DNA from: Macrostomum lignano | Taxonomy: Eukaryota | Assembly (NCBI GenBank): GCA_002269645.1 | Contig: NIVC01001539.1 | Location: forward strand, 1 to 64,000 | Length of the DNA stretch: 64,000 nucleotides | Direction of reading: 5' to 3' | Shown: positions 1 through 62,574 of the stretch, one piece after another | Position numbering within the stretch: the stretch's first letter is position 1 | Layout of the letters: each line of letters begins with the position of its first letter | Notes under the pieces: generated by a model | Seen by the model: the letters and a program-made list of their open reading frames with translations, nothing else | Database searches by the model: none | Told to the model about the DNA's origin: nothing | Position numbers and translations under genes: made by a program

Positions 1-368
1 GCAAACGTCAGCTGGCAAACGTCCCGCTGGCAACACGTCGGCTGGCAAACGTCGCTGGCAAACGTCGGCTGGCAAACGTCCCGCTGGCAAACGTCAGCTG
101 GCAAACGTCCCGCGCAAAGGCAAACGTCCGCTGGCAACGTCGGTGCAGGCAAACGTCAGCTGGCAAACGTCCCGCAGGCAAACGTCAGCTGGCAAACGTC
201 CCGCCGGCAACGTCGGCTGGCAAACGTCCGGCAGGCAAACGTCAGCTGGCAAACGTCCCGCAGGCAAACGTCGGCTGGCAAACGTCGGCTGGCAAACGTC
301 GCGCAGGCAAACGTCGGCTAGCAAACGTCGGCTGGTAAACGTCGCCGCAGGCAAACGTCCGGCAGGCA
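1..368. repeat. Degenerate tandem repeat GGCAAACGTC(N4-5), ~14-15-nt unit
   Basis: Direct reading; runs off the window start. Confidence 0.9.
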
Positions 369-1550
369 AACTTCATAGACCCCTTCCCCCGGGGGGCACC
401 GACTATTTCCCCCGGGCCTTCCACTTAGGAGTGCTTTTTAGTAGCCTTCCCTATTCCTACTGACCCACCGAGATCCATGCCATAATGCGTGGCAAATTTA
501 CTGAAAAATACTAGTAAACTAAGAATTAGAAATGAAGCCTACAAAGAGTCGTTTACCGGTCTGCTCGTGCCAGATCCTGCCGCCAAGAGAAAGTGCAGAG
601 TGCGCTCCTCTGTCTTTTTTTGGTTGTCAAGGGAACAACTAAAGGTCCGCGTTTGTCCTTAAGCCTATCCAATTAAGGATACGCAGTCATATCACGCGAG
701 TTTTATTTTTTGCAATCCTGAGCGTCTTGGCGCCTAGCTTTGTCTTGGCGTCCTGACGCGGGCATCAGTTCACATAGGAGCGTCCTGACGCCCCAAGCTG
801 CACGTGAGCACTCGCGTCCTGATGCAGGCGAGCAAGGACCCTTATGGATATACTGTACCCTGTATACATGTGTGAGTGCGTTGACTGCTGGTCGAGAAAA
901 GTGTTATTGTACAGGTGTCGGCGTTGTACAGCAGGACAGTCTCGTCTCGATCGACCAGGCTACTACATCGCCTGGTAGGGCATCGGATTAATCTGTGTAC
1001 GATCGCTGTAACTTGAGGCAACAAGGATAGACTAACTGCAAACTTTGAACAACACTATTTAAAAGTACATTTTAATTGTGTCAAAACTCCAAAATAGTAA
1101 ATAACAGCTAGGCCTACCGATGTTTAAATATTGTATTTAATAAGCTTTTCGAATGATTTTTGATTTGTTTGATTTTGACGGTATATTTGAATTTTTAGAT
1201 ATCGAAATTAAACTGAAGTCTCGTCTTGGTGAAAGATATCGATAAAAAATATCAAAAGATTCTCGGCGCTTGTTCGCTCTTCCTCAGTAATGTTGAACCA
1301 TTCGATTCTATAGATGAAGGCAGCTGGCTAAATTCTAAAGTAGGCAGAGTTCGAATCTACGGAAAGCGTAAAAGAGCCTTTTCTATATGAGTCTAAAGCG
1401 CAGAAAATGAATATGACAGTTTGTCTGTTGGGGTAGAAAAAAGAGCTAATGATATTTCTAATACGGCTAATCAGCATGCATCTGTTTTGTTAAGCAAAAG
1501 CATTTCATAGGCTGAGTATTGTGCGCATATAAGTACGTAGATTATGATTT

Positions 1551-1556
1551 TTTATT
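1551..1556 (-). promoter_or_regulatory. Polyadenylation signal of kettin-like gene
   Basis: AATAAA on minus strand, ~70 nt after the second in-frame stop. Confidence 0.5.
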
Positions 1557-1727
1557 GAACATTCCTGTTCGCATCGAGTGCGTTTATCCGCGTTGCATCC
1601 TTTCAACTGGGTGTTTTTTCAGCTAGAACTCTGATCGCTGCTCATGTTGGCCACTCCACTGAGATTGAGGCTGCCGCTGCTGCTGCTGCTGCTGCAACCG
1701 CTGCTGGTTCATTTGCTGCTGTGCCTG

Positions 1728-4150
1728 CTATGGGTTCTGCTGTCGCTGACCCCACTGCTGAGTCTGAGGCTGCTGCTGCTGCGACTGACCCCACTGCTGA
1801 GTCTGAGGCTGCTGCTGCTGCTGCGGCTGACCCCACTGCTGAGTCTGTGGTTGCTTCTGCTGCTGCGGCTGACCCCACTGCTGAGTCTGTGGTTGCTGCT
1901 GCTGCTGCGGCTGACCCCACTGCTGAGTCTGTGGTTGCTTCTGCTGCTGCGGCTGACCCCACTGCTGAGTCTGAGGCTGCTGCTGCTGCTGTCGCTGACC
2001 CCACTGCTGAGTCTGAGGCTGCTGCTGCTGCGACTGACCCCACTGCTGAGTCTGAGGCTGCTGCTGCTGCGGCTGACCCCACTGCTGAATCTGTGGTTGC
2101 TGCTGCTGCTGCTGCTGCGGCTGACGCCACTGCTGTGTCTGCGGTTGCTGCTGCGAAGAAGCCTGCGAGATCTGCGCAGTCGTGTGCCCAGTACCAGTTT
2201 GCTGCGTCTCCGACCACTGATTCGATTGTTGGGGCTGGGGCTGCAACTGCTTTTTTGGCTGCATCTGAAGCTGAGAAGTGCTTTGTTTCATTTGATATTG
2301 CTGCTCAGTCGGTGCTTGATTCTGCAATGCCTTTGTTGGAGACTGTTGCTGCGGATAAGCTGGTTGAGCCTGCTGCGGCATTTGCTGTGCTGACAGCCCA
2401 AACTGATTCTGCATTTGCGGCTGCAACTGAGCCTGCTGATGCAGCTGAATCTGATGCTGTGCTCCCGCATTTTGGCTCTGAATTTTCTGCCGCTGTGGTT
2501 GCATCTGCTGCTGCTGTGGTTTCATCTGCTGCTGTTGTGGTTTCATCTGCTGCTGCTGTGGTTTCATCTGCTGCTGCTGTGGTTGCATCTGCTGCTGCTG
2601 TGGTTGCATCTGCTGCTGCTGTGGTTGCATCTGCTGCTGTGGTTGCATCTGCTGCTGTTGTGGTTTCATCTGCTGCTGCTGTGGTTGCATCTGCTGCTGT
2701 TGTGGTTTCATCTGCTGCTGCTGTGGTTGCATCTGCTGCTGCTGTGGTTGCATCTGCTGCTGCTGTGGTTGCATCTGCTGCTGTTGTGGTTTCATCTGCT
2801 GCTGCTGTGGTTGCATCTGCTGCTGCTGTGGTTGCATCTGCTGCTGCTGTGGTTGCATCTGCTGCTGTGGTTGCATCTGCTGCTGTTGTGGTTTCATCTG
2901 CTGCTGCTGTGGTTGCATCTGCTGCTGTTGTGGTTTCATCTGCTGCTGCTGTGGTTGCATCTGCTGCTGTTGTGGTTTCATCTGCTGCTGCTGTGGTTTC
3001 ATCTGCTGCTGCTGTGGTTGCATCTGCTGCTGCTGTGGTTGCATCTGCTGCTGCTGAGGTTGCATCTGCTGCTGCTGAGGTTGCATCTGCTGCTGCTGAG
3101 GTTGCATCTGCTGCTGAGGTTGCATCTGATGCTGAGGTTGCATCTGATTTTGAGGTTGCATCTGCTGCTTTTGTGGTTTCATCTGCTGCTGCTGTGGTTG
3201 CATCTGCTGCTGCTGTGGTTGCATCTGCTGCTGAGGTTGCATCTGCTGCTGTTGTGGTTGCATCTGCTGCTGTTGTGGTTTCATCTGCTGCTGTTGTGGT
3301 TGCATCTGCTGCTGCTGAGGTTGCATCTGCTGCTGCTGTGGTTGCATCTGCTGCTGCTGAGGTTGCATCTGCTGCTGCTGAGGTTGCATCTGCTGCTGCT
3401 GAGGTTGCATCTGCTGCTGCTGTGGTTGCATCTGCTGCTGAGGTTGCATCTGATGCTGTTGTGGTTGCATCTGCTGCTGAGGTTGCATCTGCTGCTGAGG
3501 TTGCATCTGATGCTGAGGTTGCATCTGATGCTGAGGTTGTGGTCTTTGTCGCTGTCTCTGAGGCCGCTGCTGCTGCTGCTGTTGCGGCTGGTGTACTTGC
3601 TGCTGAGGCAATGGGGCCTGTGGCACCTGCTGCTGGTGAGGCAATGGGGCCTGTGACACCTGCTGCTGCTGAGGCAATGAGGCCTGTGGCACCTGCTGCT
3701 GCTGAGGCAATGGGGCCTGTGGCACCTGCTGCTGCTGAGGCAATGGGGCCTGTGGCACCTGCTGCTGCTGAGGCAATGAGGCCTGTGGCACCTGCTGCTG
3801 CTGAGGCAATGGAGCCTGTGGCACCTGCTGCTGCTGAGGCAATCGAGCCTGTGGCACCTGCTGCTGCTGAGGCAATGAGGCCTGTGGCACCTGCTGCTGC
3901 TGAGGCAATCGAGTCTGTGGTACGGTGGCTTTCGGCAGCTGCTGCGCATTAGTCTGAGCCGGAGTCTTTGGCCAGGCAGGATTGAGGTCCTTGACCGTTG
4001 CTTCAGCATTTGGCTTGTGCACGGGCAGCTGCCTGCCCTCCTGGCAGCCTGCGTAGAGCCCGCCGCGCAGCCGGGACTGGACGGAGGCGTACAGCCTCTC
4101 AGCCTGCTCCACCTCCGGGTCCCGGTAGGTCAGAGACTTGATCTCCGATT
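1728..4150 (-). CDS. Kettin-like exon 10: Gln/Pro-rich repeat tail
   Basis: ESEIKSLTYRDPEVEQAERLYASVQSRL, then PQAPLPQQQQV, QPQQQQM and PQTQQWGQPQQQQ repeat blocks; 2.4 kb open in one frame. Confidence 0.75.
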
Positions 4151-7100
4151 CTGCGATAATAAATTTTCGAACTTGCTGAGAATCATCATGGACACACTCA
4201 TGATCATCATGGACACACTCATAATCATCCTGGACACACTCATAATCATCATGGACATACTCATAACCATCCTGGACACACTCATAATCATTATGGACAC
4301 ACTCATAATCATCATGGACACACTCATAATCATCATGGACACACTCATAATCATCATGGACATACTCATAACCATCCTGGACACACTTATAATCATCATG
4401 GACACACTCATAATCATCATGGACACACTCATAATCATCATGGACATACTCATAACCATCCTGGACACACTCATAATCATTATGGACACACTCATAACCA
4501 TCCTGGACACACTCATAATCATCATGGACACACTCATAATCATCATGGACATACTCATAACCATCCTGGACACACTCATAATCATTATGGACACACTCAT
4601 AATCATCATGGACACACTCATAATCATCATGGACACACTCATAATCATCATGGACATACTCATAACCATCCTGGACACACTCATAATCATTATGGACACA
4701 CTCATAACCATCCTGGACACACTCATAATCATCATGGACACATTCATAATCATCATGGACACACTCATAATCACCCTGGACACCCTTGTAATAATCATAA
4801 ACACACGCAATCCTATAGACATACTCGTAATAACCACGAGACACAATAATTTTACGACATAAAACACAAATTCGTAGAATTCCGCACCTCGTTCCACTTT
4901 TCTTAGATTGTCCGCCGCTCCCATCGGTCTGCTGATCTTCTGCTGCAGCTCCTGCGATATCGCCACTTTGCGCAGCTCGGCCAGCCGACTGAAATTCGCC
5001 TCTGCATTGGGGAAGAGCAATGGAACGATCTTCAGTCTTTCCATTTGGAACAATTGATCTCTGTTGACAGTTCTGTGTGTGGTCTTAACTTTTACAAGAC
5101 TGATTGTGTCAGACAATAACACTAACACTAAGAGGCTCATCATTGAATGCTCCGATTGGTTCCCGGATCTGCATCACTGTCATCTGAGGTCATAAAAGTC
5201 CACTAAGAAGGATATCTTTTGTCTTGAAAATAATTCACTTGATAACTATGTGAAAAAGAGGAAGGCGTAGCGTAGGTATGTTACTATAGTGTGGAGCACA
5301 ACAATGGATTATTTGTCCATGGTCAGCAGTGCTTACCATGTAGGCACTAAGGGAGTTAGATCATGGATCCCTTCATCCATGAATGAGTGGCCCATCTTGT
5401 GTATATATGATCTTTGGGCCAGACTCATAGCTCGTACCCATGGATGAAGGAATATCATGGATTTCTCATCTGCGCAATGTCCGTGGAGTCGTGGACCCGA
5501 CCAACCCCCAATCTTGGAATTGTGACGTACCGGTTGAAGTAGATTGACTGAGCGAGTCTATAAATACTCATCCCGCTTCGTATAAAATTTTCAACTTTCT
5601 TTTCAGTATAGGTTGTCTTAAAGAGCAAATGTATAGTCACGATCAATGCAAAGAGTAACAGTAGCTGGGGAGTAGAGGGTTTCTGGGAGGGAGAGGATGA
5701 TCCACTTTGAGCATGAGCGGCTACAGCTTGATCTATGTTATGTTATTCCTTCATCCATGCTCATACCCGGCTCAGTCTGCTCCAATAGAGACTGGGTCAT
5801 CCAATTCACTCAAAGTAGCAGACAAGAGCGGGAATGATAAGCTCTGTTAATTTATGGTAAGCACCATTTGATGACGCAATTCTTATGGTTTCAAGCCTAA
5901 AAAATCATTCGGAATTATATATCTAGTCCTCTATTTCTCGCTCAGAACAGCAGCAACAGAATCAAAGTACGGCTGACTGACGCTGCAGTTAGAGAAGAAG
6001 CATCGCGTGGCGCATCTTTCCACGCCGGGGTAGAGGGAGGGCCTTCATTTTTTAGCAGCGGTGCTTCGTGGACCGTCATTCGCCTTGGATGGAGACGACT
6101 GTATGGTAGACTATGGTATACACACAAGATTTGAAGAGAGAGAGAGAGAGGACTCAGACTGAAAGAAATCTTGAAGATCTAATCAGGACAAATCACTGTC
6201 CCTCAAGAGGTGTTTCTGAAGCCGTACAACCTCAACTTGACTCAAGCCAGCACAAGCTTATAAGAACTTCTGAGACTCAAGTTCCTTTCCCACAGTAGTG
6301 AATTATTAGCCTCAAATTCTTCTCTAGCTACTTAGTAGTAGGCAATCTCAAACAGCAAACATCCATGCTCTCGCCTGGCTCAATGTGCTTGAGATCCGGT
6401 CGAAAGTCGCCAGCCGGCACCACGCTGACGACGGCCTCGGCGAACACCTGACCCAATGGGTTCGCCGCCAACACTCGGAGCTGGTGCTGGCCGACATCCT
6501 GGCAGCGAACAATCTCCAGCCAGTTGATGGAACCGTCTTTGTGCACAACGTAGTTGGCCGTCTGGGAGCCCGGTGGAATCGTGATTAATTTTATCGATTT
6601 TTATTGAGTAAAAAGACTCACGAATCTAATAACGAAATTCAAAACTTGACTTACATTGCTTGTCTCCAGGTTGTTCTGTGTCTCATCACCGCTCTGGAAA
6701 AAATTCAATGCCAATGTGGGGGTCAGAAGCGTCAATTGGATGCAAGGACATCAGATAAGTCAGAATTGAATATCATGCCTAAAACCTTGGGGTCAAGAGT
6801 GGTGTAACGAGCGGCCAATTGGATGTCAGGAGCGTCCCAAATTTTCATCATGACAGCCCCTACATGTATAAATACGCTCGTATATGTTCACATCCTCCAT
6901 GGCATATGAAATTTAAGTACTGACCGTCGCAATCGGTTGATTATCCAGACACCAGGTGACTACTGGCCGCGGATTGCCGCTGAGCTTTACCAGCACCTTC
7001 ACCGGATCGCCTTCGCCAACCGTGCACGACTCGGGTAGAATGTCGAAATATGGCGCCGATTGAGGCTCCTCCGATTCTCGAAATCGAAACTCGTCAGGCG

Positions 7101-10100
7101 CTATGGGGGTCCTGAAACGGGGGTTGGTTTCTCGAGGTCTAAAGTAGTGCAAATAGGTTTGCTTATCGTACAGGCTAAGATTGAGGTAGGTTTGGTTGGG
7201 GCACGGTTTTAGGTGAATGTGGCTAGGCAGAGGAGTGAGGTGAGTGTTGTGGTAAATCAGCTATGCTGCTTGTTTAAAGTGGTTGAAAACTACGAGAGAG
7301 CTATCAAAGCTCTGATGTCTGTATTTATATTGTAAAGCGATGCTACGTGCGCGAGAGTGATAACATAATTTAAGCGTACACAATTTGCCCATAACTCAAA
7401 TAGCAATAACTCAAACCTAACGTGCCAAGCTTGCGTAAATAATAATAGAGAAAGAAATAATAGGAAAGTACAAATACAAATCAATACTCGTACTGAGTGC
7501 ATGCACATACTTGTAGCTACACGACAAGTGTGGCTAGGCAGGGAGTGAGGTTGGATTGGCTAGGCAGGGGAGTGAGGTGGGTGTGGCTAGGCAAGGGAGT
7601 TAGGTGGGTGTGGCTAGGCAGGGGAGTGAGGTGGTTGTGGCTTGGCAAGGGAGTGAGGTGGGTGTGGCTAGGCAAGGGAGTGAGGTGGGTGTGGCTAGGC
7701 AGGGGAGTGAGGTGGGTGTGGCTAGGCAAGGGAGTGAGGTGGATGTGGCTAGGCAAGGGAGTTAGGTGGGTGTGGCTAGGCAGGGGAGTGAGGTGGTTGT
7801 GGCTTGGCAAGGGAGTGAGGTGGGTGCATCTGGGGTACGGAGGAGTGTGGTTAAAATGGGGAGTGATTTGTTTGCGGACAAACTATTAATTACTGTTGAG
7901 ACTTACTCTCGCCACTGTCTCTCCAGCTCCTCTAGACGCTTGTATCCCTGCGCCTCACCAGGCAGCTGCGTCCGAGTGACGACCCCTTCTCCGGCCCGGC
8001 AGACCAGGCCGACGCGATTCGACTCGGCTACGCCGCCGCGGTTGCTGACCACCGCCCAGTAGAGGCCGGAGTCCTCCGGCTTGCAGTGACTGATGTGCAG
8101 CAGGGCGCGGCCTTTTTCTAGTTCAAAGCGCACTCGAGCGGCGCAAGCCACCGAGGCGCCGTCTTTGATCCACTCGACGCTGAGGTCGCTGTCGCTTGAC
8201 GGTTCAACCTAAGTTGCAGTGAAAATATTCTTTAAACAATGATACAGCGTTTGTATTCAAAGATGAGTTTTAAGTTAACGAAAGGCCTCTCTTATGATTA
8301 GGGTTAGGGTAGGGTTAGGGTTAGGGCTAGGGTTAGGGCTAGGCTTAGGGTTAGGATTTGGATTAGGGTTAGGGTTAGGGTAGGGTTAGGGTTACGGCGA
8401 GGGTTAGGGTTCGGGCTAGGGTTACTAGCTTCTTCCGAAGACTGCAGACTTTTCGCCGACTGTAGACTTCAGCTTTCTTCTTACTTAGTAAAAACTCAAT
8501 TGCGTCATATCAGATATTAAATTCGCTACGCCTCCCTAAAGACGCACCTGCAGATCCAGCAGCACCTGGCCGCCCTCGCGGATCTGCGGCGGCGGCTTGA
8601 CACCTCGTACAATCCTTGGCGGCGGCTGCTGCTGCTGCTGCATTGCCAGAAACGCGGCGCTAGAATCGTCGGTTCGACGCTCGAGCTCCTCCTCGAGCAG
8701 CATGAGGCTGCGCATGCTCTGCTCGGCGTCTCCGGGCAGCTGGGAGGTGGTGACCACCCCGCCCTGCGCGTAGCAGACCAGCCGGCAGTAGCCAGACTGG
8801 TGCTGCCCGTTTTCGCTCAGCGCCACGGCGCAGTAGTCACCGGAGTCTTCGGCGTTGGCGTGCCCGAACCGCAGCTGAGCGACGCCCATTTCGAAACTGG
8901 CCGTCACGCGCGAGCCGAACTGGACTGGCTGGCCGTCCTTGAACCAGGCCACCTGGACTCGACTGCCGTTGCCGGGGTCGAGGCGAGCTTCGAACGCGGC
9001 TGGCGAGCCTTCGATCAGCTGGAGCTGGGCCGGCGACGGGTCGGAGAGGAAGCGGGGCGGCTCCGGCAGCTGGTTCCGCGATTCAGCCTCCAGGCTGTTG
9101 GTGGCGGTGTTGTGGTAAAGCTACAGGGAATCTGGCCTCATCGGTACACCATCCACGTTACTCTCTATTTGATGGCAAAATGATTTTTTCCTAACTCCGC
9201 AGTGGATTTTTTTCCAGGAAATTGGCCTCCAAAAACTACACGATCTTTGAGTTCTACGTCCTGTTACACCACAGTGGTCCTTGGCGTTACATCTTGATAC
9301 AGGTCTGGTACGAGACTTGCGGCGTTAGTAAAAGGGCACAACTATGCAAAAATAATTTCCTGTGAGAATTTTAACACACTTGCTAAGATGCATAAAATAT
9401 TAATCCAGTGGAGAGGTCTCGCTTACGGATCGAACTCCTCCTGCAGAGTGTACTCCTCCAGTCGCTGAATATTCATGACAGACGACTCCGGTAGGGCGGA
9501 CGCCGTGACGACGCCCGCCGAAGCTGAGCACCTGAAATTTTTGTTTTCGCGATTTGAGAAGCTCAGTATGCTGATTTTCTGCAGTATTGAGAGCACCAGT
9601 GCTCATGCTTAGCTACCTGAGCTCAGCCTGGTTGCTCTGCGCCTTGCCGTGCTTGTTGGCGGCCTCGCAGTGATAAAATCCGTTGTCCTCCGGGTAGCAG
9701 CAGTTGATCTCCAGCGCCGTGTAGCCCCGGTCGTACACAGCCTTGAGCCGGGAGCCCAGCGTCAGCGGGAAGCCGTTCTTGAACCATTCGATCTGCACGT
9801 TGGGATCCGCGGCCGGCGTCACCCGAGTCTCGAACCGGACGCGACCGTTTTCCTGGGCCACGATGCTCTCCAAATGCCGCACGAACTGCGGCACCGCCTG
9901 AGGCACCTGGTCGTCAAAGTCTTGGCGGACGCTGCGGCTGTTCAGCCGCTCGTTTAGTCGGTCGATGTTTGCCGCCATGGACGCTTCGGGGAGTTGCGTT
10001 CGCGTCACCACGCCTTCGTCGGGCACCACTCTGGCGGAAACAATGGGAGTTTACAATACTCGAGTACAAAATATCCGGATAGTTACTAGCCAAATGGGTC

Positions 10101-11584
10101 AGTGTATTCGTTGCAAGTTAAGTAGAGTTTGCTTTGGTTAGTACTTGCCAAAGTTACGGTGGAAGCTGCGATCTCAAATAATCTTATCAGGGGGGGGGGG
10201 TGCGTAGCCCAGTGGTCTGGCGCGGCGCTCTGATGTGCCAGCGGCCCAGGCTCGATTCCCAGTGCAGTCACATTAACTTTGGGGCTGAATTGGAATCTCG
10301 GCTTGGCTCTGCTCGTGCAATTAACGGCCTTAAGGGCCAACCCCCCAAGGCGCAGTGAAGTGTACATGCCTAACGATAAATAAAGTTAGGGCCGCTGTAC
10401 ACTCCTGTGTGAGTGTGTGCTTGTGCTTTTGACTGTGTACATATCCGCGCTTTTGTGCCTGCTCGTTCACACAGTGTGTACAGTGACTCTGACTTTCGAA
10501 TCTTCAGGCATGTACAGTCTCTCCGTGCCTTGAACCAGGGATCTTGACGCGTTTCCTTCCGAACTGCTGTGCTGCAGACTCTGATTTACAAAAAAAAATT
10601 GACAGACAGATCTGGGCACTCACGTCAGTGTCACGGGGTTGCTTTGGTCCATGCCGAAGTTGCTTTTTGCTACGCACGAGTACTCGCCGCTGTCGTCCGG
10701 GTAGGTGTGCGTGATGTGCAGCAGCACGAAGCCTCGCTCGAAAGTTGTGTTAAAACGGGAGCCTTATGAAGGGCGGCGAGATTTTACTGCAGATGGACCA
10801 TTGTTGCTTGGAGTCAGTCGCACACAACACATTTAATCAACATTGACTTGCTGAAGACCTTGCCACAATAGAAGCGTTCTAATTCTCAAACCTGGCTCTA
10901 CCCAGACCATGCTCTGTCCTCTGGTCGGGTCTATGCTCTACCCAGACCATGCTCCACCCTCTGGTCCGGTCCATGCCCTACCCTCCGGTCCAGTCCATGC
11001 CCTACCCTCCGGTGCAGTCCATGCTCTACCCTCTGGTCCAGTCCATGCTCTACCCTCTGGTCCAGTCCATGCCCTACCCTCCGGTCCAGTCCATGCCCTA
11101 CCCTCCGGTCCAGTCCATGCCCTACCCTCTGGTCCAGTCCATGCCCTACCCTCCGGTCCAGTCCATGCCCTACCCTCCGGTCCAGTCCATGCTCTACCCT
11201 CCGGTGCAGTCCATGCTCTACCCTCTGGTCCAGTCCATGCCCTACCCTCCGGTCCAGTCCATGCCCTACCCTCCGGTCCAGTCCATGCCCTACCCTCCGG
11301 TCCAGTCCATGCCCTACCCTCTGGCCGATCATACCTGCATTCAGTGGGCGGCCATCCTTGAACCACTCGGTTGCCAAGGAGCTGTCATTGAGCGGCAGCA
11401 GCCGACACTCCAGGTGCACCGAGCGGCCCTCGGCCACGCTTAGCACCGGCTTGGGGTGCTTGACGAACCTGGGCGGCTCACCCGGCCGGGTCAACGACGC
11501 TCGCCGGATCCCCACGGAGGAGTCGCCATCGTCGCTGATAAATTCGCGCGACAGGCCGCCGTCGACGATGGCAGCGGCCGACAT
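1728..11584 (-). CDS. Kettin/titin-like protein: five Ig domains plus long Gln/Pro-rich tail (10 exons, 1564 aa)
   Basis: Exons 11584-11335, 10762-10624, 10030-9617, 9531-9427, 9094-8548, 8208-7907, 7138-6925, 6561-6375, 5001-4888, 4150-1728. All junction phases match; total 4695 nt. Ig I-set motifs (WFKDG, DSGEYSC, DNGFYHC, DSGDYCA, DSGLYWA) and kettin-type linkers (GVVT..QLP..I/L..LE). AATAAA lies downstream. Confidence 0.85.
4181..4790. repeat. 21-nt minisatellite (CATAATCATCATGGACACACT), kettin-like intron 9
   Basis: Direct reading. Confidence 0.95.
4888..5001 (-). CDS. Kettin-like exon 9
   Basis: EANFSRLAELRKVAISQELQQKISRPMGAADNLRKVER; symmetric phase-1 exon, 114 nt. Confidence 0.75.
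5431..5767. mobile_element. hAT-like MITE (321 bp)
   Basis: Perfect 16-bp TIR CATGGATGAAGGAATA (5439-5454 and 5744-5759), flanked by near-identical 8-mers CTCGTACC / CTCATACC (probable TSD). Confidence 0.6.
6375..6561 (-). CDS. Kettin-like exon 8 (Ig5 C-half)
   Basis: TANYVVHKDG...VLAANPLG...DFRPDLKHIEP; the in-phase donor is GC (CAG|GCGAGA). Confidence 0.8.
6925..7138 (-). CDS. Kettin-like exon 7 (Ig5 N-half)
   Basis: APYFDILPESCTVGEGDPVKVLVKLSGNPRPVVTW. Confidence 0.88.
7526..7826. repeat. 27-nt G-rich minisatellite, kettin-like intron 6
   Basis: Unit GTGGCTAGGCAGGGGAGTGAGGTGGGT. Confidence 0.95.
7907..8208 (-). CDS. Kettin-like exon 6 (Ig4 + linker)
   Basis: VEPSSDSDLSVEWIKDG...EDSGLYWAVVSNRGG...GVVTRTQLP; donor GTAAGT. 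Confidence 0.88.
8298..8423 (+). repeat. Interstitial telomere-like (TTAGGG)n, degenerate
   Basis: About 20 TTAGGG / CTAGGG / TAGGG units. Confidence 0.9.
8548..9094 (-). CDS. Kettin-like exon 5 (Ig3, linker, start of Ig4)
   Basis: PPRFLSDP...VAWFKDG...EDSGDYCAVA...GGVVTTSQLP. Confidence 0.88.
9427..9531 (-). CDS. Kettin-like exon 4 (linker)
   Basis: CSASAGVVTASALPESSVMNIQRLEEY; TTTCAG and GTAAGC boundaries; 105 nt. Confidence 0.85.
9617..10030 (-). CDS. Kettin-like exon 3 (linker + Ig2)
   Basis: GVVTRTQLP...EWFKNG...EDNGFYHCEAANKHG. Confidence 0.9.
10199..10480 (+). mobile_element. tRNA-derived SINE-like element
   Basis: A box TAGCCCAGTGG, B box GGCTCGATTCC; body contains GCCAACCCCC and TGTACACTCCTGTGTGAG. 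Confidence 0.6.
10624..10762 (-). CDS. Kettin-like exon 2 (Ig1 C-half)
   Basis: GSRFNTTFERGFVLLHITHTYPDDSGEYSCVAKSNFG; AG and GTGAGT boundaries; absent from ORF track. Confidence 0.9.
10895..11325. repeat. 24-nt minisatellite, kettin-like intron 1
   Basis: Unit CCAGTCCATGCCCTACCCTCCGGT. Confidence 0.95.
11335..11584 (-). CDS. Kettin-like exon 1 (probable ATG; Ig1 N-half)
   Basis: MSAAAIV...PPRFVKHPKP...EWFKDGRPLNA; donor G|GTATGA. Confidence 0.8.
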
Positions 11585-12246
11585 GCCCGAATCGGAGGAA
11601 AAGAAGCGGAAAGTTCAAAGAAAAAATTAGGGGGGGGGAGAAGTTAACTGCGTGAAAATTGTGAAAAATCTCGATGGGAGGAGCAGCCGAGTTTCTCCAC
11701 ACGAAGTTGGACGTCTTTTCCTGCGACTTCCGCTCTGCTGCCTACCAGACTTCCTACCCCAGCTGCTTATCTCCCGCCAGAAATCCCTTTAAAATTCTAG
11801 CCGAAATTCTCTCCCCCCCAAGCCGTCCAGATCGGCGCTGGCGAGGAGGGTAGGACGTTGTTGCGCTCGCAAAATTATCCCCTCGACGCACGCGCACGGG
11901 AATCGATCAATCCCAACGCCAGGTAAAGGGCAAGGGGGTGAGGTCTCGGGGAGTCGGAAGGTCGGAATCTGCAGACTGGCCGGCCGACCGTCAACTGAAT
12001 AGCAGGAATAGCCAGCATCGATTCTGTTCTGTTGCAGAAACTATATAAGAAATTTTCCCTGCTTTGCCTGACGTGTTTGGCTTGCAGTCGACAACAAAGC
12101 CGCCCCCCAACCACTACTTGCGGAGAGGCGATGAACACAGGGCTAACCTTTCGCGAACGGTGCTGGGCCTTCAACCCGGGTGTACAAATGAAAATGGTTA
12201 ATCGACGATTTTCATGGACCCCTGGTGGGGACGTCTGAACTGGAAC

Positions 12247-12905
12247 TCAAGGACTCCCTGGCCTTCCGTCCCAGATTGATTCTCAAGGACTCCCTGGCCT
12301 TCCGTCCCAGATTGATTCTCAAGGACTCCCTGGCCTTCCGTCCCAGATTGATTCTCAAGGACTCCCTGGCCTTCCGTCCCAGATTGAGTGTCAAGGACTC
12401 CCTGGCCTTCCGTCCCAGATTGAGTCTCAAGGACTCCCTGGCCTTCCGCTCCAGACTCAGTCTCAAGGAGTCATTGGCCTTCCGTTCCAGATTAAGTCTC
12501 AAAGGACTCCCTGGCCTTCCGTCCCAGATTGAGTCTCAAGTACTCTCTGGCCTTTCGTTCCATATTGAGTCTCAAGTACTCTCTGGCCTTTCGTTCCATA
12601 TTGAGTCTCAAGGACTCTCTGGCCTTTCGTTCCATATTGATCCTCAAGGACTCCCTGGCCTTCCGTCCCAGATTGAGTCTCAAGGACTCCCTGGCCTTCC
12701 GCTCCAGACTCAGTCTCAAGGAGTCATTGGCCTTCCGTCCCAGATTGAGTCTCAAGGACTCCCTGGCCTTCCGCTCCAGACTCTGTCTCAAGGACTCCCT
12801 GGCCTTCCGTCCCAGATTGAGTCTCAAGGACTCCCTGGCCTTCCGCTCCAGACTCAGTCTCAAGGAGTCATTGGCCTTCCGTTCCAGATTGAGTTTCAAG
12901 GACTC
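12247..12905. repeat. 36-nt minisatellite
   Basis: Unit CTCAAGGACTCCCTGGCCTTCCGTCCCAGATTGAGT. Confidence 0.95.
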
Positions 12906-13349
12906 CCTTGCATCTCGGGTCCCATGTGCCTGCTCGGAAAAAAGTACCAATCGAGTACATGGAGCACTTTTTCTCTTTGTAGCCGCAGTCAGCTTCATTT
13001 ACTGGGTGATAATTGCCTGCCCGTCCGTATGCTCCAGTGTCCATGGGATCTCGGATTAATCCCATCGGAGGCCGAGCCTTGCTCAACCGAGAGAAATTCC
13101 TATTTCAATTGGCGGGGGGGAGTGAAGCGAAAGAAGCTGAGCTAGGCTTGTGTGCAGGAAATCTGATTTGGCAACTCGAATTAGTGAGGCGCTCACTGAC
13201 TCCAAGCACGCTGGGTACGGCTTCATCTGACCTCAGCTTGCACTGGCTTATCGCTGGCCCTGCAGGCACTGCTGTATTGCTGCGAGCACTTTCCTCACAA
13301 GTACGAGTACTAGGCTGAGAATTGCTGCCCACGAAGTGCTGGCCCGATG

Positions 13350-13700
13350 ACTCTCTCACCCTGTCTCACTCTCTCACCCTGTCTCACTCTCTCACCCTGT
13401 CTCACTCTCTCACCCTGTCTCACTCTCTAACCCTGTCTCACTCTCTAACCCTGTCTCACTCTCTAACCCTGTCTCACTCTCTCACCCTGTCTCACTCTCT
13501 TATTCTGTCTCACTGTCTCACTGTGTCTCACTCTCTCACCCTGTCTCACTCTCTCACCCTGTCTCACTCTCTAACCCTGTCTCACTCTCTAACCCTGTCT
13601 CACTCTCTCACCCTGTCTCACTCTCTTATTCTGTCTCACTGTCTCACTGTGTCTCACTCTCTCACCCTGTCTCACTGTCTCACTCTCACCGTCTCCCACT
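13350..13700. repeat. 18-nt minisatellite
   Basis: Unit CTCTCTCACCCTGTCTCA. Confidence 0.95.
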
Positions 13701-16128: not shown

Positions 16129-33287
<17,159 letters not shown>

Positions 33288-35261: not shown

Positions 35262-38200
35262 CTGATCTCTAATCTCTCTGATCTCTCTCTGATCTCTCTC
35301 TGATCTCTCTCTGATCTCTAATCTCTCTCTAATCTTTCTCTGATCTCTCTCTGATCTCTCTCTGATCTCTCTCTGATCTCTCTCTGATCTCTCTCTGATC
35401 TCTCTCTGATCTCTAATCTCTCTCTAATCTTTCTCTGATCTCTCTCTGATCTCTCTCTGATCTCTCTCTGATCTCTCTCTGATCTCTCTCTAATCTCTCT
35501 CTGATCTCTCTCTGATCTCGCTCTAATCTCTCTCTGATCTCTGATCTCTCTCTGATCTCTCTCTGATCTCTCTCTGATCTCTCTCTGATCTCTCTCTGAT
35601 ATCTCTCTGATCTCTCTCTGATATCTCCCTGATCTCTCTCTGATCTCTCTCTCTGATCTCTTTCTGATCCCTCTCTGATCTCTCTCTGATCTCTCTCTCT
35701 CTCTCTCTCTGATCTCTCTCTGATCTCTCTCTGATCTCTCTCTGATCTCTTTCTGATCCCTCTCTGATCTCTCTCTGATCTCTCTCTGATCTCTCTCTCT
35801 CTGATCTCTCTCTGATCCCTCTCTGATCTCTCTGATCTCTCTCTGATCTCTCTCTGATCTCTCTCTGATCTCTCTCTGATCTCTCTCTGATCTCTCTCTG
35901 ATCTCTCTCTGATCTCTCTCTGATCTCTCTCGGATCTCTCTCTGGTCTCTCTCTGATCTCTCTCTGATCTCTCTCTGATCCCTCTCTGAACTCTCTGATC
36001 TCTCTCTGATCTCTCTCTGATCTCTCTCTCTGATCTCTCTCTGATCTCTCTCTGATCCCTCTCTGATCTCTCTGATCTCTCTCTGATCTCTCTTTGATCT
36101 CTCTCTGATCTCTCTCTGATCTCTCTCTGATCTCTCTCTGATCTCTCTCTGATCCCTCTCTGATCTCTCTCTGATCTCTCTCTGATCTCTCTCTGATCCC
36201 TCTCTGATCTCTCTGATCTCTCTCTGATCTCTCTCTGATCTCTCTCTGATCTCTCTCTGATCTCTCTCTCTGATCTCTCCCTGATGTCTCTCTGATCTCT
36301 CTCGGATCTCTCTCTGATCTCTAATCTCTAATCTCTCTCTAATCTCTCTCTGATCTTTCTCTAATCTCTCTCTGGTCTCTCTCTGATCTCTCTCTGATCT
36401 CTCTCTGATCTCTCTCTGATCTCTCTCTGATCTCTCTCTGATGTCTCTCTGATCCCTCTCTGATCTCTCTGATCTCTCTCTGATCTCTCTCTGATCTCTC
36501 TCTGATCTCTCTCTGATCTCTCTCTCTGATCTCTCCCTGATGTCTCTCTGATCTCTCTCGGATCTCTCTCTGATCTCTAATCTCTAATCTCTCTCTGATC
36601 TCTAATCTCTAATCTCTCTCTAATCTCTCTCTGATCTCTCTCTGATCTCTCTCTGATCTCTCTCTGATCTCTCTCTGATCTCTCTCTGATCTCTCTCTGA
36701 TCCCTCTCTGATCTCTCTGATCTCTCTCTGATCTCTCTCTGATCTCTCTCTGATCTCTCTCTGATCTCTCTCTCTGATCTCTCCCTGATGTCTCTCTGAT
36801 CTCTCTCGGATCTCTCTCTCTCTGATCTCTCCCTGATGTCTCTCTGATCTCTCTCGGATCTCTCTGATCTCTCTCTGATCTCTCTCTGATCTCTCTCTGA
36901 TCTCTCTCTGATCTCTCTCTAATCTCTCTCTGATCTCTCTCTGAACTTTCTCTAATCTCTCTCTGGTCTCTCTCTGATCTCTCTCTGATCTCTCTCTGAT
37001 CTGTCTCTGATCTCTCTCTGATCTCTCTCTGATCTCTCTCTGATCTCTCTCTGATCTCTCTCTGATCTCTCTCTGATCTCTCTCTGATCCCTCTCTGATC
37101 TCTCTGATCTCTCTGATCTCTCTCTCTGATCTCTCTGATCTCTCTCTGATCTCTCTCTGATCTCTCTCTGATCTCTAATCTCTCTCTAATCTTTCTCTGA
37201 TCTCTCTCTGATCTCTCTCTGATCTCTCTCTGATCTCTCTCTGATCTCTCTCTGATCTCTCTCTGATCTCTCTCTGATCTCTAATCTCTCTCTAATCTTT
37301 CTCTGATCTCTCTCTGATCTCTCTCTGATCTCTCTCTGATCTCTCTCTGATCTCTCTCTAATCTCTCTCTGATCTCTCTCTGATCTCGCTCTAATCTCTC
37401 TCTGATCTCTGATCTCTCTCTGATCTCTCTCTGATCTCTCTCTGATCTCTCTCTGATCTCTCTCTGATATCTCTCTGATCTCTCTCTGATCTCTCTCTGA
37501 TCTCTCTCTGATCTCTCTCTCTGATCTCTCTCTGATCTCTCTCTAATCTCTCTCTGATCTCTCTCTCTCTCTCTCTCTGATCTCTCTCTGATCTCTCTCT
37601 GATGTCTCTCTGATCTCTCTCGGATCTCTCTCTGATCTCTAATCTCTAATCTCTCTCTAATCTCTCTCTGATCTTTCTCTAATCTCTCTCTGGTCTCTCT
37701 CTGATCTCTCTCTGATCTCTCTCTGATCTCTCTCTGATCTCTCTCTCTGATCTCTCCCTGATGTCTCTCTGATCTCTCTCGGATCTCTCTCTGATCTCTA
37801 ATCTCTAATCTCTTTCTAATCTCTCTCTGATCTTTCTCTAATCTCTCTCTGGTCTCTCTCTGATCTCTCTCTGATCTCTCTCGGATCTCTCTCTGATCTC
37901 TCTCTGATCCCTCTCTGATCTCTCTGATCTCTCTCTCTGATCTCTCTCTGATCTCTCTGATCTCTCTCTGATCTCTCTCTGATCTCTCTCTGATCTCTCT
38001 CTGATCTCTCTCTGATCTCTCTGATCTCTCTCTCTCTGATCTCTCTCTGATCTCTCTCTGATCTCTCTCTGATCTCTCTCTGATCTCTCTCTGATCTCTC
38101 TCTAATCTCTCTCTAATCTCTCTCTGATCTTTCTCTAATCTCTCTCTGGTCTCTCTCTGATCTTTCTCTAATCTCTCTCTGGTCTCTCTCTGATCTCTCT

Positions 38201-38278
38201 CTGATCTCTCTCTGATCTCTCTCTGATCTCTTTCTGATCTCTCTCTGATCTCTCTCTGATCTCTCTCTGATCTCTCCT
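35262..38278. repeat. 3-kb 11-nt satellite (GATCTCTCTCT)n
   Basis: Direct reading. Confidence 0.97.

Positions 38279-47082: not shown

Positions 47083-62574
<15,492 letters not shown>

What the first reader, a model, noticed from the sequence alone, without database searches (positions are those of the whole stretch)
1728..11584. Mini-kettin ending in a glutenin-like Gln/Pro repeat domain
Seen: splicing joins five Ig domains, kettin-type linkers and a short post-Ig segment (DFRPDLKHIEPEANFSRLAELRKV...YRDPEVEQAERLY) in frame to a 2.4-kb exon. That exon has three repeat blocks: PQAPLPQQQQV x~11, (Q/K)PQQQQM x~50, and PQTQQWGQPQQQQ x~10. Its units are all multiples of 3 nt and the non-repetitive spacer is also Gln-rich, unlike most intronic arrays here (8, 11, 16, 20, 22, 31, 44, 53 nt). 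Established: kettins carry about 30 or more Ig repeats, and in insect Sallimus/titin the elastic part is PEVK. Inference: a very short kettin in which a Gln/Pro polymer resembling gluten or involucrin repeats takes the place of PEVK. It could be an elastic spring, a phase-separating scaffold or a transglutaminase substrate (Gln plus interspersed Lys). I know of no described muscle protein with this architecture.
Basis: partly seen in the sequence, partly recalled or inferred. Interest (0 to 1): 0.8.

Follow-up and report, generated by a model that had tools for sequence, protein, structure and literature searches.

The report
Small kettin-like protein, giant Gln-rich tail
A flatworm (Macrostomum lignano) gene for a small, probably actin-binding muscle-type protein with five titin/kettin-like Ig domains ends in a 776-residue glutamine/proline/methionine repeat tail, which seems to be a species-specific expansion of a shorter Pro/Gln-rich tail that related flatworm proteins already have.

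Summary
On the minus strand, 11 exons (11584-1728) join in frame into a 1,568-codon ORF. It has five I-set Ig domains, four kettin-type spacers and a conserved 85-residue post-Ig segment. A 2,423-nt last exon follows, with arrays of 33 nt x10, 21 nt x51 and 42 nt x10.

The organism is Macrostomum lignano. UniProt holds partial models of this gene, named 'Titin', that break off at the first Gln repeat.

The gene is not a truncated kettin. It belongs to a conserved, uncharacterised flatworm family with 3-5 Ig domains, an invariant DFRP[DE]L motif, LKKVE and LY..V...LR. In cestodes the exon carrying LY..LR continues into a 70-140-residue Pro/Gln-rich tail, as it does here. The Macrostomum tail (Gln 54%, Pro 14%, Met 7%) is therefore best read as an expansion of an ancestral disordered tail, not a replacement for PEVK.

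The best evidence that the tail is coding is phase: 429 of 435 CAG/CAA triplets sit in the exon's frame over 2.3 kb, including the non-repetitive spacer.

Still open:
- There is no RNA evidence.
- The TAG at 1730-1728 looks like a recent nonsense mutation.
- A downstream final mini-exon is possible.
- Muscle expression and any spring function are inferred only.

The parts
11335..11584 (-). Exon 1. First in-frame ATG at 11584, a short N-terminal stretch and the first half of Ig1. Donor G|gtatga. The true 5' end is uncertain.
   Evidence: UniProt models start inside this exon.
10624..10762 (-). Exon 2: second half of Ig1.
9617..10030 (-). Exon 3: kettin-type spacer 1 (VTRTQLP..IDRLN) and Ig2.
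9427..9531 (-). Exon 4: spacer 2 (VTASALP..IQRLE).
8548..9094 (-). Exon 5: Ig3, spacer 3 (VTTSQLP..LMLLE) and the first half of Ig4.
7907..8208 (-). Exon 6: second half of Ig4 and spacer 4 (VTRTQLP..KRLEELE).
6925..7111 (-). Exon 7: first half of Ig5.
   Evidence: Same boundary in Spirometra.
6655..6693 (-). 39-nt micro-exon (SGDETQNNLETSN), flanked by ttttccag| and |gtaagt. Probably a cassette exon inside Ig5.
   Evidence: Present in UniProt models P0001, P0151 and P0152. Orthologues have only 3-7 residues here.
6375..6561 (-). Exon 9: second half of Ig5 and the start of the post-Ig segment (DFRPDLKHIEP). The donor is GC (CCAG|gcgaga).
   Evidence: Automated UniProt models skip DFRPDLKHIEP by using an upstream GT.
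4888..5001 (-). Exon 10: (E)ANFSRLAELRKVAISQELQQKISRPMGAADNLRKVER, the middle of the conserved post-Ig segment.
1728..4150 (-). Exon 11 (2,423 nt). It holds the end of the conserved segment (ESEIKSLTYRDPEVEQAERLYASVQSRLRGG, 4150-4056) and then the 776-residue Gln/Pro/Met tail, up to TAG 1730-1728.
3598..3920 (-). Array 1: 33-nt unit x10, PQA(P/S/R)LPQQQQV. Each unit also contains a phase-0 donor-like CAG|GTGCCA.
2487..3533 (-). Array 2: 21-nt unit x51, (Q/K)PQQQQM. All length variants are whole CAG codons.
2157..2486 (-). Non-repetitive Gln-rich spacer (110 codons, no stop). CAG/CAA triplets by phase are 39:5:0.
1737..2156 (-). Array 3: 42-nt unit x10, PQTQQWGQ(P/S/R)QQQQ(Q).
1623..1727 (-). 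34 further codons in the same Gln frame after the TAG (QAQQQMNQQRLQQQQQQRQPQSQWSGQHEQRSEF), then TAG 1625-1623. This is probably the older end of the ORF.
1551..1556 (-). AATAAA, about 70 nt after the second stop, at the switch from CAG-rich to AT-rich sequence. Probable poly(A) signal.
1195..1224 (-). Weak lead only: a possible terminal mini-exon (TRLQFNFDI*) that resembles the family C-terminus AEFxIx[IL]*. ATTAAA lies at 1141.
   Evidence: The search pattern was loosened after the candidate was seen.

Best explanation
**What it is.** This is a Macrostomum lignano gene for a 1,568-residue protein from a conserved flatworm family of small titin/kettin-like proteins. The family is uncharacterised.

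**N-terminal half (792 aa).** It has five I-set Ig domains separated by four 45-55-residue spacers that carry the two kettin spacer motifs. After them comes a family-specific, mostly helical 85-residue segment. That segment opens with an invariant DFRxxL motif, the F-actin-binding motif of myosin light-chain kinase. By inference this half lies along actin thin filaments the way kettin Ig-spacer modules do.

**C-terminal half.** The last exon carries the reading frame from the conserved LY..V...LR motif straight into a 776-residue tail that is predicted to be disordered (Gln 54%, Pro 14%, Met 7%, with scattered Lys). The tail consists of three tandem arrays plus Gln-rich unique sequence.

**Origin of the tail.** Cestode orthologues have a 70-140-residue Pro/Gln-rich tail in the homologous exon, with small tandem repeats of their own. 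The M. lignano paralogue also runs into Gln-rich sequence. The tail is therefore a lineage-specific tandem-repeat expansion of an ancestral low-complexity tail.

**Likely role (inferred, not shown).** The tail would act as a long flexible tether or self-associating low-complexity arm projecting from an actin-bound anchor.

**State of this copy.** The TAG at 1730-1728 looks like a recent CAG>TAG change that removes the last 34 codons in this genomic copy.
For: **Domains and gene model**
- Domains.
- The gene model has canonical junctions and a CDS divisible by 3.

**Species and family**
- Species and existing partial models (A0A1I8HAJ4, A0A1I8IVX9, A0A1I8GUV7, named 'Titin').
- Orthologues and paralogue align through the post-Ig segment. 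L101, L116, V119, E124, L125, E162 and L172 are invariant, and DFRP[DE]L is nearly invariant.
- Spirometra has the same exon boundaries. Its tail lies in the same exon as LY..LR and contains PPPPPAQPVA repeats.

**Actin-binding motifs**
- The kettin spacer motifs are defined in PMC3207145. All four linkers fit them.
- DFRXXL is an F-actin motif in PMC2196421.

**Evidence that the tail is coding**
- 429 of 435 CAG/CAA triplets are in the exon frame from 3920 to 1626. This includes the unique spacer (39:5:0) and the post-TAG stretch (17:1:0).
- The 176 non-array codons are stop-free, against 55 of 2,000 shuffles.
- All unit-length variants are whole codons, and none of the roughly 420 Gln codons has become TAG or TAA inside the ORF.
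- AATAAA follows just after the ORF, where the composition changes.

**Structure prediction**
- AlphaFold gives Ig5 pLDDT about 95, helices in the post-Ig segment at pLDDT 57-80, and the start of the tail below 50.

**Size limit**
- No further Ig exons in the window, and the upstream neighbour is a MEKK4-like gene.
Against: - No transcript or peptide evidence was available. Both searches with single sequences from this gene (Ig5 to pre-repeat, and the unique spacer) found nothing in the word-indexed protein database, and a profile of the post-Ig segment found only one 114-aa fragment.
- The public M. lignano models stop within about 60 residues of RLRGG, so they confirm only the start of the tail.
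- Codon usage in the tail differs from the Ig part. Pro is CCA/CCT rather than CCG/CCC, Lys is AAA rather than AAG, and GC3 is 0.66 against 0.79.
- The three arrays are open in all three minus-strand frames, so their openness carries no information.
- Intronic arrays of this gene are also 3n and open.
- In Spirometra the tail exon is penultimate and splices to a final mini-exon. The homologous exon here could therefore use an internal donor, for example CAG|GTGCCA x10 in array 1, so that part of the tail would be intronic in some transcripts.
- The in-frame TAG before the end of the Gln frame shows this copy is not perfectly maintained.
- Actin binding, muscle expression and any mechanical role are inferred from motifs only.
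Confidence: 0.7

Rival explanations
1. Two kinds of transcript exist. In one, exon 11 is read through to the poly(A) signal at about 1556, giving the long Gln tail. In the other, a phase-0 donor early in exon 11 (CCC|GTGCAC, ACG|GTCAAG or one of the ten CAG|GTGCCA in array 1) splices to a small terminal exon. That exon would lie at 1224-1195 or beyond the window edge and would restore a family-type hydrophobic C-terminus. Arrays 2-3 would then be intronic in that isoform.
For: - Spirometra has exactly this layout: tail exon, a 6.6-kb intron, then a 25-codon final exon ending AEFSIEI*.
- Hymenolepis has several isoform models that differ in the tail.
- All Val codons in the early tail provide phase-0 GT sites.
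- TRLQFNFDI* lies on the correct strand about 430 nt downstream of the ORF, with a pyrimidine tract, aag|/cag| acceptors and ATTAAA 54 nt after its stop. It is one of only two matches to the loosened pattern in all six frames of the 64-kb window.
Against: - The pattern was widened after the candidate was seen, so the chance estimate (0.03-0.1) is soft.
- The strict orthologue pattern F[STQA][IV][EQ][IL]* does not match it.
- The phase lock and the open unique spacer show that arrays 2-3 and the spacer have been kept in frame. That is not expected of sequence that is only ever an intron.
Confidence: 0.2
2. The Gln-rich region beyond the first 50-150 residues is not translated at all. It would be an intronic or 3'-UTR CAG-type minisatellite complex that happens to be open because CAG-rich DNA lacks stop codons, in a genome full of tandem arrays.
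For: - The arrays are open in all three minus frames, and a plus-strand frame of 743 codons is also open.
- The window holds more than 40 tandem arrays, and this gene's introns contain 3n arrays that read as ORFs.
- Codon usage differs from the Ig exons.
- There is an in-frame TAG before the end of the Gln frame.
- No database protein covers the spacer.
Against: - After RLRGG there is no in-frame stop for 776 codons, so without splicing the ribosome must read the tail.
- CAG/CAA triplets are phase-locked 429/435 across three unrelated arrays, two unique joints and the unique 330-nt spacer, in the same phase as the conserved upstream coding sequence.
- The unique segments are stop-free at p of about 0.03.
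- Homologous exons in cestodes and in the M. lignano paralogue also continue into Pro/Gln-rich coding sequence.
Confidence: 0.07
3. The window holds a decaying duplicate (pseudogene-like copy) of the gene in a polyploid genome, and the functional copy lies elsewhere.
For: - The TAG at 1730-1728 interrupts a frame that runs 34 codons further.
- At least three near-identical (about 98%) UniProt entries for this gene imply several genomic copies.
- The family C-terminal motif is missing.
Against: - All ten Ig and post-Ig exons are intact, with good splice sites and no frameshift or stop.
- The single nonsense change removes only 2% of the protein.
Confidence: 0.03

Closest known systems
Kettin / Sallimus (Drosophila sls) and C. 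elegans KETN-1
   Same: - Titin-type I-set Ig domains alternate with spacers of about 40-55 residues.
- The spacers carry motif I, (I/V)xxxQ(H/L)(P/E), and motif II, I/LxxLE, which Hakeda et al. proposed as actin-binding sites.
- There is no Fn3 or kinase domain.
   Different: - Five modules instead of 30-35.
- About 88 kDa of folded part instead of 470-540 kDa.
- It has a DFRxxL-containing post-Ig segment and a Gln/Pro tail, features not among those described for kettin in Hakeda et al..
- It forms its own orthologous family in flatworms.
Uncharacterised flatworm Ig proteins: Hymenolepis diminuta VUZ41204-7 (A0A564Y1U5), Spirometra KAL7057852 / VZI05847, Cichlidogyrus KAL3308451, and the M. 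lignano paralogue A0A1I8GIE9 / GZH8 / FX68
   Same: - Same Ig-spacer modules.
- Same post-Ig segment (DFRPDLKH..PENPFKKM..LKKVE..LY..V...LR).
- Same exon boundaries.
- In cestodes and in the paralogue, a Pro/Gln-rich tail lies in the same exon.
   Different: - The tail here is 776 residues of tandem arrays, against 10-140 residues in relatives.
- Cestodes have three Ig domains plus a Gln/Pro-rich N-terminal exon of about 355 residues that is absent from this window.
- Cestodes end in a separate mini-exon, AEFxIx[IL]*, which was not found cleanly here.
PEVK segments of titin and Sallimus
   Same: A long, low-complexity, proline-containing, probably disordered repeat region attached to Ig modules of a titin-family protein.
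   Different: - The composition is Gln 54%, Pro 14%, Met 7%, with almost no Glu or Val.
- The region is terminal, not flanked by Ig domains on both sides, so it cannot transmit tension unless its end is anchored.
- No sequence similarity was found.
N-terminal actin-binding region of smooth/non-muscle myosin light-chain kinase
   Same: A DFRxxL motif next to Ig domains and a repeat region (PMC2196421). The motif is nearly invariant across the flatworm family.
   Different: - One motif copy instead of three to five.
- No kinase or Fn3 domain.
- The alignment to Pecten MLCK outside the Ig domain is not significant.
Myotilin / palladin / myopalladin (recalled from memory, not tested here)
   Same: Small proteins with 2-5 titin-like Ig domains, Pro-rich low-complexity regions and actin binding. 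They have a short conserved C-terminal peptide that docks PDZ proteins. The flatworm family's hydrophobic-x-hydrophobic C-terminus (IEI, IEL, IQL, VQI) would fit such a role.
   Different: - None of them appears among the 60 best solved-structure sequence matches at E<=1e-5; titin is the top hit.
- Kettin-type spacers are not a feature of that family.
- The window copy lacks the C-terminal motif.
Cereal prolamins (glutenin, gliadin) and involucrin
   Same: Gln/Pro-rich short tandem repeats.
   Different: The resemblance is in composition only. No Pfam family reaches E<=1 on the tail. The methionine-rich QPQQQQM unit matched no Pfam family, prolamin families included.

Membership tests
Kettin / Sallimus | Titin-type I-set Ig domains with no Fn3 or kinase domains | tested here: met
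   Pfam finds I-set x5 and nothing else relevant. The best solved-structure relatives are titin Ig domains.
Kettin / Sallimus | Spacers of about 40 residues carrying motif I, IXXXQH(P/E), and motif II, IQXLE (Hakeda et al. 2000) | tested here: met
   All four linkers fit: VTRTQLP-7-IDRLN, VTASALP-6-IQRLE, VTTSQLP-9-LMLLE and VTRTQLP-6-KRLEELE. Val replaces Ile and Leu replaces His. One linker matches IQXLE exactly.
Kettin / Sallimus | Giant protein with about 30-35 Ig-spacer modules | tested here: not met
   There are five Ig domains. tblastn finds no further Ig exon in 11.6-64 kb. A MEKK4-like gene occupies 47-56 kb on the same strand.
Kettin / Sallimus | Binds actin and alpha-actinin, and localises to the Z-disc or dense body | not testable with these tools
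   Needs biochemistry and localisation.
Flatworm small Ig / DFRxxL family (unnamed) | Post-Ig segment DFRP[DE]LKH..PE(N)PFKKM..LKKVE..EL...KPK...ER...E(A/T)E.LY..V...LR | tested here: met
   12-sequence alignments with 34-60% identity to the window sequence, with invariant and nearly invariant columns. phmmer gives E from 1e-25 to 1e-52 for full-length orthologues.
Flatworm small Ig / DFRxxL family (unnamed) | Shared exon-intron boundaries around Ig5 and the post-Ig segment | tested here: met
   Spirometra L002 has exons ..LPT|SGGGG..HVEPE|NPFKK..LER|ESQ.., matching the window junctions.
Flatworm small Ig / DFRxxL family (unnamed) | Pro/Gln-rich low-complexity tail that continues the LY..LR exon | tested here: met
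   Present in Spirometra, Hymenolepis, P0034, P0080 and the M. lignano paralogue. Absent or short in P0021, P0035, P0039 and P0041.
Flatworm small Ig / DFRxxL family (unnamed) | Final mini-exon ending in AEF[STQ]I[EQ][IL]* | tested here: inconclusive
   There is no strict match in window 1-1625. The older ORF ends ..RSEF*. A loose candidate, TRLQFNFDI*, lies at 1224-1195. The exon could also lie beyond the window edge.
PEVK-type elastic segment | Composition dominated by Pro, Glu, Val and Lys, with PPAK-type repeats of about 28 residues | tested here: not met
   The tail is Gln 54%, Pro 14%, Met 7%, Lys 3%, Val 2%. Units are 7, 11 and 14 residues.
PEVK-type elastic segment | Intrinsically disordered and flanked by anchoring domains at both ends | tested here: inconclusive
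   The start of the tail is predicted with pLDDT below 50. No C-terminal anchoring domain was found.
Prolamins / involucrin | Match to the family's sequence profile | tested here: not met
   hmmscan of the 807-residue exon-11 product against Pfam-A returns no family at E<=1.
MLCK actin-binding region | DFRXXL motif | tested here: met
   DFRPDL in the window. DFRP[DE]L or DYRPDL in 10 of 12 family members. The motif is defined in PMC2196421.
MLCK actin-binding region | Three to five tandem DFRXXL copies, and a kinase domain downstream | tested here: not met
   There is a single copy and no kinase domain.

The most novel reading that the evidence does not exclude
In Macrostomum, an actin-bound mini-kettin has acquired a 776-residue Gln/Pro/Met polymer that is functional in its own right. 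It might act as an entropic tether, or as a self-associating, possibly redox- or transglutaminase-sensitive, low-complexity arm that organises thin-filament attachment sites in flatworm muscle. That would be a muscle-cytoskeleton solution unlike PEVK. The whole flatworm family (kettin spacers, DFRxxL, Pro/Gln tail, hydrophobic C-terminal peptide) would then be a previously unrecognised class of thin-filament scaffold.
Probability: 0.2. Interest if true: 0.7.

Novelty: new variant of a known kind. Interest (0 to 1): 0.42.

Why it matters
**A neglected protein family.** If the model is right, flatworms have a conserved family of small kettin-like proteins that nobody has characterised. The proteins combine two independent actin-binding signatures (kettin spacer motifs and the MLCK DFRxxL motif) with a fast-evolving Pro/Gln tail. 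This gives a handle on how thin filaments are organised in muscles that lack Z-discs.

**Repeat expansion inside a coding exon.** The Macrostomum copy shows minisatellite expansion doubling a protein's length while keeping the frame. Three arrays and more than 70 repeat units sit in phase.

**Practical annotation points.** Public M. lignano models of this gene are truncated. They skip the conserved DFRPDLKHIEP because the intron there is GC-AG. One of them adds a dubious N-terminus translated from a 36-nt array.

Tried and rejected
**Searches that gave little**
- Word-indexed protein searches with Ig5 plus the post-Ig segment, with the unique spacer, and with a profile of the post-Ig segment gave almost nothing. 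Only the exhaustive HMMER search found the family.
- Apparent matches of the post-Ig segment to vertebrate titin, Drosophila unc-89 and Pecten MLCK are a neighbouring Ig domain or non-significant alignment, not homology of that segment.
- Literature searches for kettin in flatworms returned only the author name 'Ketting' or unrelated papers. No paper on this family was found.

**Ideas tested and dropped**
- The large Ig proteins that score best (M. lignano A0A1I8GNE9, C. japonica, Saccoglossus titin-like) lack the kettin spacer motifs. They could not serve as a kettin reference, so the published motif definitions were used instead.
- 'Unit length is a multiple of 3, therefore coding' is rejected as evidence.
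- ORF length alone is rejected as evidence.
- Repeat-unit variants are roughly 10 synonymous to 14 non-synonymous, with no stops. That is too few independent events to test selection.
- No Gln/Pro-rich N-terminal exon like the cestode one exists anywhere in the window.
- Shifting the frame by one base around ..SEF* does not recover a family-type C-terminus (read directly from the sequence).

**Steps not taken**
- Fold search was not run. The only confidently folded part of the model is an ordinary Ig domain.
- The look-up of encoding contigs had no record for the Hymenolepis protein.

Full report
**1. What is in the sequence**

The gene lies on the minus strand. A three-frame translation and Pfam (I-set E=6e-64, five stretches) show five Ig domains spread over exons between 11584 and 6375. 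I fixed every junction from the DNA and assembled an 11-exon model:

| Exon | Coordinates |
|---|---|
| 1 | 11584-11335 |
| 2 | 10762-10624 |
| 3 | 10030-9617 |
| 4 | 9531-9427 |
| 5 | 9094-8548 |
| 6 | 8208-7907 |
| 7 | 7111-6925 |
| 8 | 6693-6655 |
| 9 | 6561-6375 |
| 10 | 5001-4888 |
| 11 | 4150-1728 |

The CDS is 4,707 nt and encodes 1,568 residues. Nine introns are GT-AG with good pyrimidine tracts. The intron after 6375 must be GC-AG (CCAG|gcgaga ... tgcag|AG), because only that join keeps DFRPDLKHIEP-EANFSRL, which is conserved in every relative. A 39-nt micro-exon (6693-6655) has near-perfect signals and is used by the public models.

- 33 nt x10
- 21 nt x51
- 42 nt x10

They are separated by a 21-codon joint and a 110-codon non-repetitive, Gln-rich spacer. 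After RLRGG the tail is 776 residues: Gln 54%, Pro 14%, Met 7%, Lys 3%.

**2. Is the tail coding?**

- About a third of the 40-plus arrays in the window have periods divisible by 3, as chance predicts. But all arrays in and just upstream of this gene do (21, 27, 6, 24, 36, 18), and several read as long ORFs.
- The CAG-rich arrays are open in all three minus frames, and a 743-codon plus-strand ORF overlaps them.

Better evidence comes from five points.
- (a) The frame entering exon 11 is fixed by homology up to RLRGG. No stop follows for 776 codons, so unless the RNA is spliced the tail must be translated.
- (b) The 176 codons that are not part of any array are stop-free. Only 55 of 2,000 dinucleotide shuffles achieve this.
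- (c) CAG/CAA triplets are phase-locked to that frame: 429 of 435 between 3920 and 1626. This includes the unique spacer (39:5:0, holding in each of its five 66-nt sub-windows) and the 102 nt after the TAG (17:1:0). Sequence downstream of 1624 shows no phase preference (6:5:5). No net frameshift has survived across three unrelated arrays, two joints and a diverged unique segment.
- (d) All unit-length variants are whole codons, and none of about 420 Gln codons inside the ORF has mutated to a stop.
- (e) The CAG-rich composition ends abruptly, and AATAAA follows at 1556-1551.

Three points count against.
- Codon usage differs from the Ig exons (GC3 0.66 against 0.79; Pro CCA/CCT against CCG/CCC).
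- I could obtain no transcript or peptide evidence.
- The TAG at 1730-1728 sits 34 codons before the point where the Gln frame really ends (..WSGQHEQRSEF, TAG 1625-1623). I read this as a recent CAG>TAG change in this genomic copy. UniProt holds at least three near-identical entries for this gene, which implies several copies.

**3. Whose gene is it, and what are its relatives?**

The exhaustive HMMER search returned a 98%-identical protein. It is UniProt A0A1I8HAJ4, 'Titin', from Macrostomum lignano, with cluster mates A0A1I8IVX9 and A0A1I8GUV7. These are partial automated models with several faults:
- They end at or just inside the first Gln repeat.
- One leaves the frame through loss of one C in a CCCC run (VPQAHCLSSSRC).
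- They skip DFRPDLKHIEP by choosing an upstream GT donor.
- One has an N-terminus translated from the 36-nt array at 12.2-12.9 kb.

The same search revealed a family.
- A M. lignano paralogue (A0A1I8GIE9, GZH8, FX68) is 56-58% identical over the post-Ig segment. It runs RGGHYAG and then Gln-rich sequence.
- Orthologues exist in Spirometra (KAL7057852, VZI05847), Hymenolepis diminuta (VUZ41204-7), Cichlidogyrus (KAL3308451) and several unnamed assemblies.
- Members have three to five Ig domains with the same spacers.
- All share an 85-residue post-Ig segment: DFRP[DE]LKH..PENPFKKM..LKKVE..EL...KPK...ER...E(A/T)E.LY..V...LR.

In Spirometra the exon boundaries around Ig5 and this segment are the same as in the window. 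The exon carrying LY..LR continues for about 140 codons of Pro/Gln-rich sequence with its own PPPPPAQPVA repeats. It then splices across 6.6 kb to a 25-codon final exon ending AEFSIEI*. Hymenolepis and two unnamed members end AEFQIEL, AEFTIQL and AAFAVQI. Cestodes also carry a Gln/Pro-rich N-terminal exon of about 355 residues, which has no counterpart in this window.

So a Pro/Gln-rich tail is ancestral to at least part of the family. Macrostomum has expanded it about ten-fold by tandem duplication.

**4. Is it a kettin?**

Hakeda et al. (PMC3207145) define kettin as 30-35 Ig domains separated by spacers of about 40 residues. The spacers carry motif I, IXXXQH(P/E), and motif II, IQXLE, which the authors propose as actin-binding sites.

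All four linkers here fit in slightly degenerate form, and one contains IQRLE exactly. The Ig domains are titin-type.

The defining size is not met. There are five modules and no other Ig exon in the window. A MEKK4-like gene on the same strand (kinase exon 47083-48138, MEKK4_N exons up to 55.8 kb) bounds the gene on its 5' side. It should be filed as a member of its own flatworm family that works like a short kettin, not as a kettin orthologue.

**5. How it probably works**

*Shown:*
- the domain order
- the conservation
- the predicted fold of Ig5 (pLDDT about 95)
- low-to-moderate-confidence helices in the post-Ig segment
- disorder at the start of the tail

*Inferred:*
- Four Ig-spacer modules lie along F-actin as in kettin.
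- The nearly invariant DFRxxL adds an MLCK-type contact. It matches the high-affinity F-actin motif of MLCK (PMC2196421).
- The tail projects as a long flexible, Gln-driven self-associating arm.

Because the tail is terminal and no C-terminal anchoring domain was found, a load-bearing spring like PEVK is less likely than a tether or scaffold. No Pfam family matches the tail, so the likeness to glutenin or involucrin is compositional only. Muscle expression was not testable here.

**6. What remains open**
- Whether some transcripts leave exon 11 early. Ten CAG|GTGCCA sites in array 1 and three Val-codon GT sites before it are phase-0 donors. They could splice to a terminal mini-exon as in Spirometra.
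- The only candidate for that mini-exon in the window is TRLQFNFDI* (1224-1195, with ATTAAA at 1141). It is one of two hits to a pattern that I loosened after seeing it, so it is a lead, not a finding.
- Whether the TAG at 1730-1728 is present in the other genomic copies.
- Where the true 5' end lies.

**7. Verdict**

This is a real and unusual member of an uncharacterised but conserved flatworm family. Its Gln/Pro/Met tail is a lineage-specific expansion of an existing low-complexity tail. It is a new variant of a known kind and of moderate interest.

Noticed in passing
window 8298-8424: An interstitial (TTAGGG)x21 telomere-type array sits inside the intron between exons 5 and 6 of the Ig gene.
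   Followed up: no
window 4181-4806, 7528-7826, 10942-11321, 12246-12908, 13350-13683: Every tandem array in or just upstream of this gene has a period divisible by 3 (21, 27, 24, 36, 18), and several are open in frame with the adjacent exon. Examples are DDYECVH in the frame of exon 11 and GHGLDRRV in the frame of exon 1. Elsewhere in the window only about a third of arrays are 3n. One UniProt model (A0A1I8IVX9) even translates the 36-nt array as an N-terminus.
   Followed up: partly
window 6373-6375 / 5001-5002: There is a GC-AG intron. Automated public models avoid it and so delete the family's most conserved motif (DFRPDLKHIEP).
   Followed up: yes
window 1623-1730: An in-frame TAG (1730-1728) is followed by 34 more phase-locked Gln-rich codons and a second TAG (1625-1623). 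This looks like a recent nonsense change in this copy.
   Followed up: partly
window 47083-48138, 50180-50644, 53054-53413, 53711-55816 (minus strand): The upstream neighbour is a MEKK4 (MAP3K4)-like gene, with Pkinase at E=1e-52 and MEKK4_N in three exons. Its 702-codon ORF at 53708-55816 begins with about 45 in-frame copies of a 21-nt unit (SGQFSSL). This may be another case of a 3n array fused to coding sequence.
   Followed up: partly
window 23861-32866: A 9-kb array of an 8-nt unit (TGTCTTAG x1,125). Together with arrays of 25 nt x110 (17266-19916) and 11 nt x273 (35273-38276), it makes most of 14-39 kb tandem repeat.
   Followed up: no
L002 (Spirometra sp. Aus1 CM118280.1) 41808-42311: The annotated Spirometra protein (941 aa) lacks about 49 codons of PPPPPAQPVA repeats that are open in frame in the genome. 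These repeats are present in the S. erinaceieuropaei protein (999 aa). Either the model splices out part of the tail exon or the tail length varies.
   Followed up: partly
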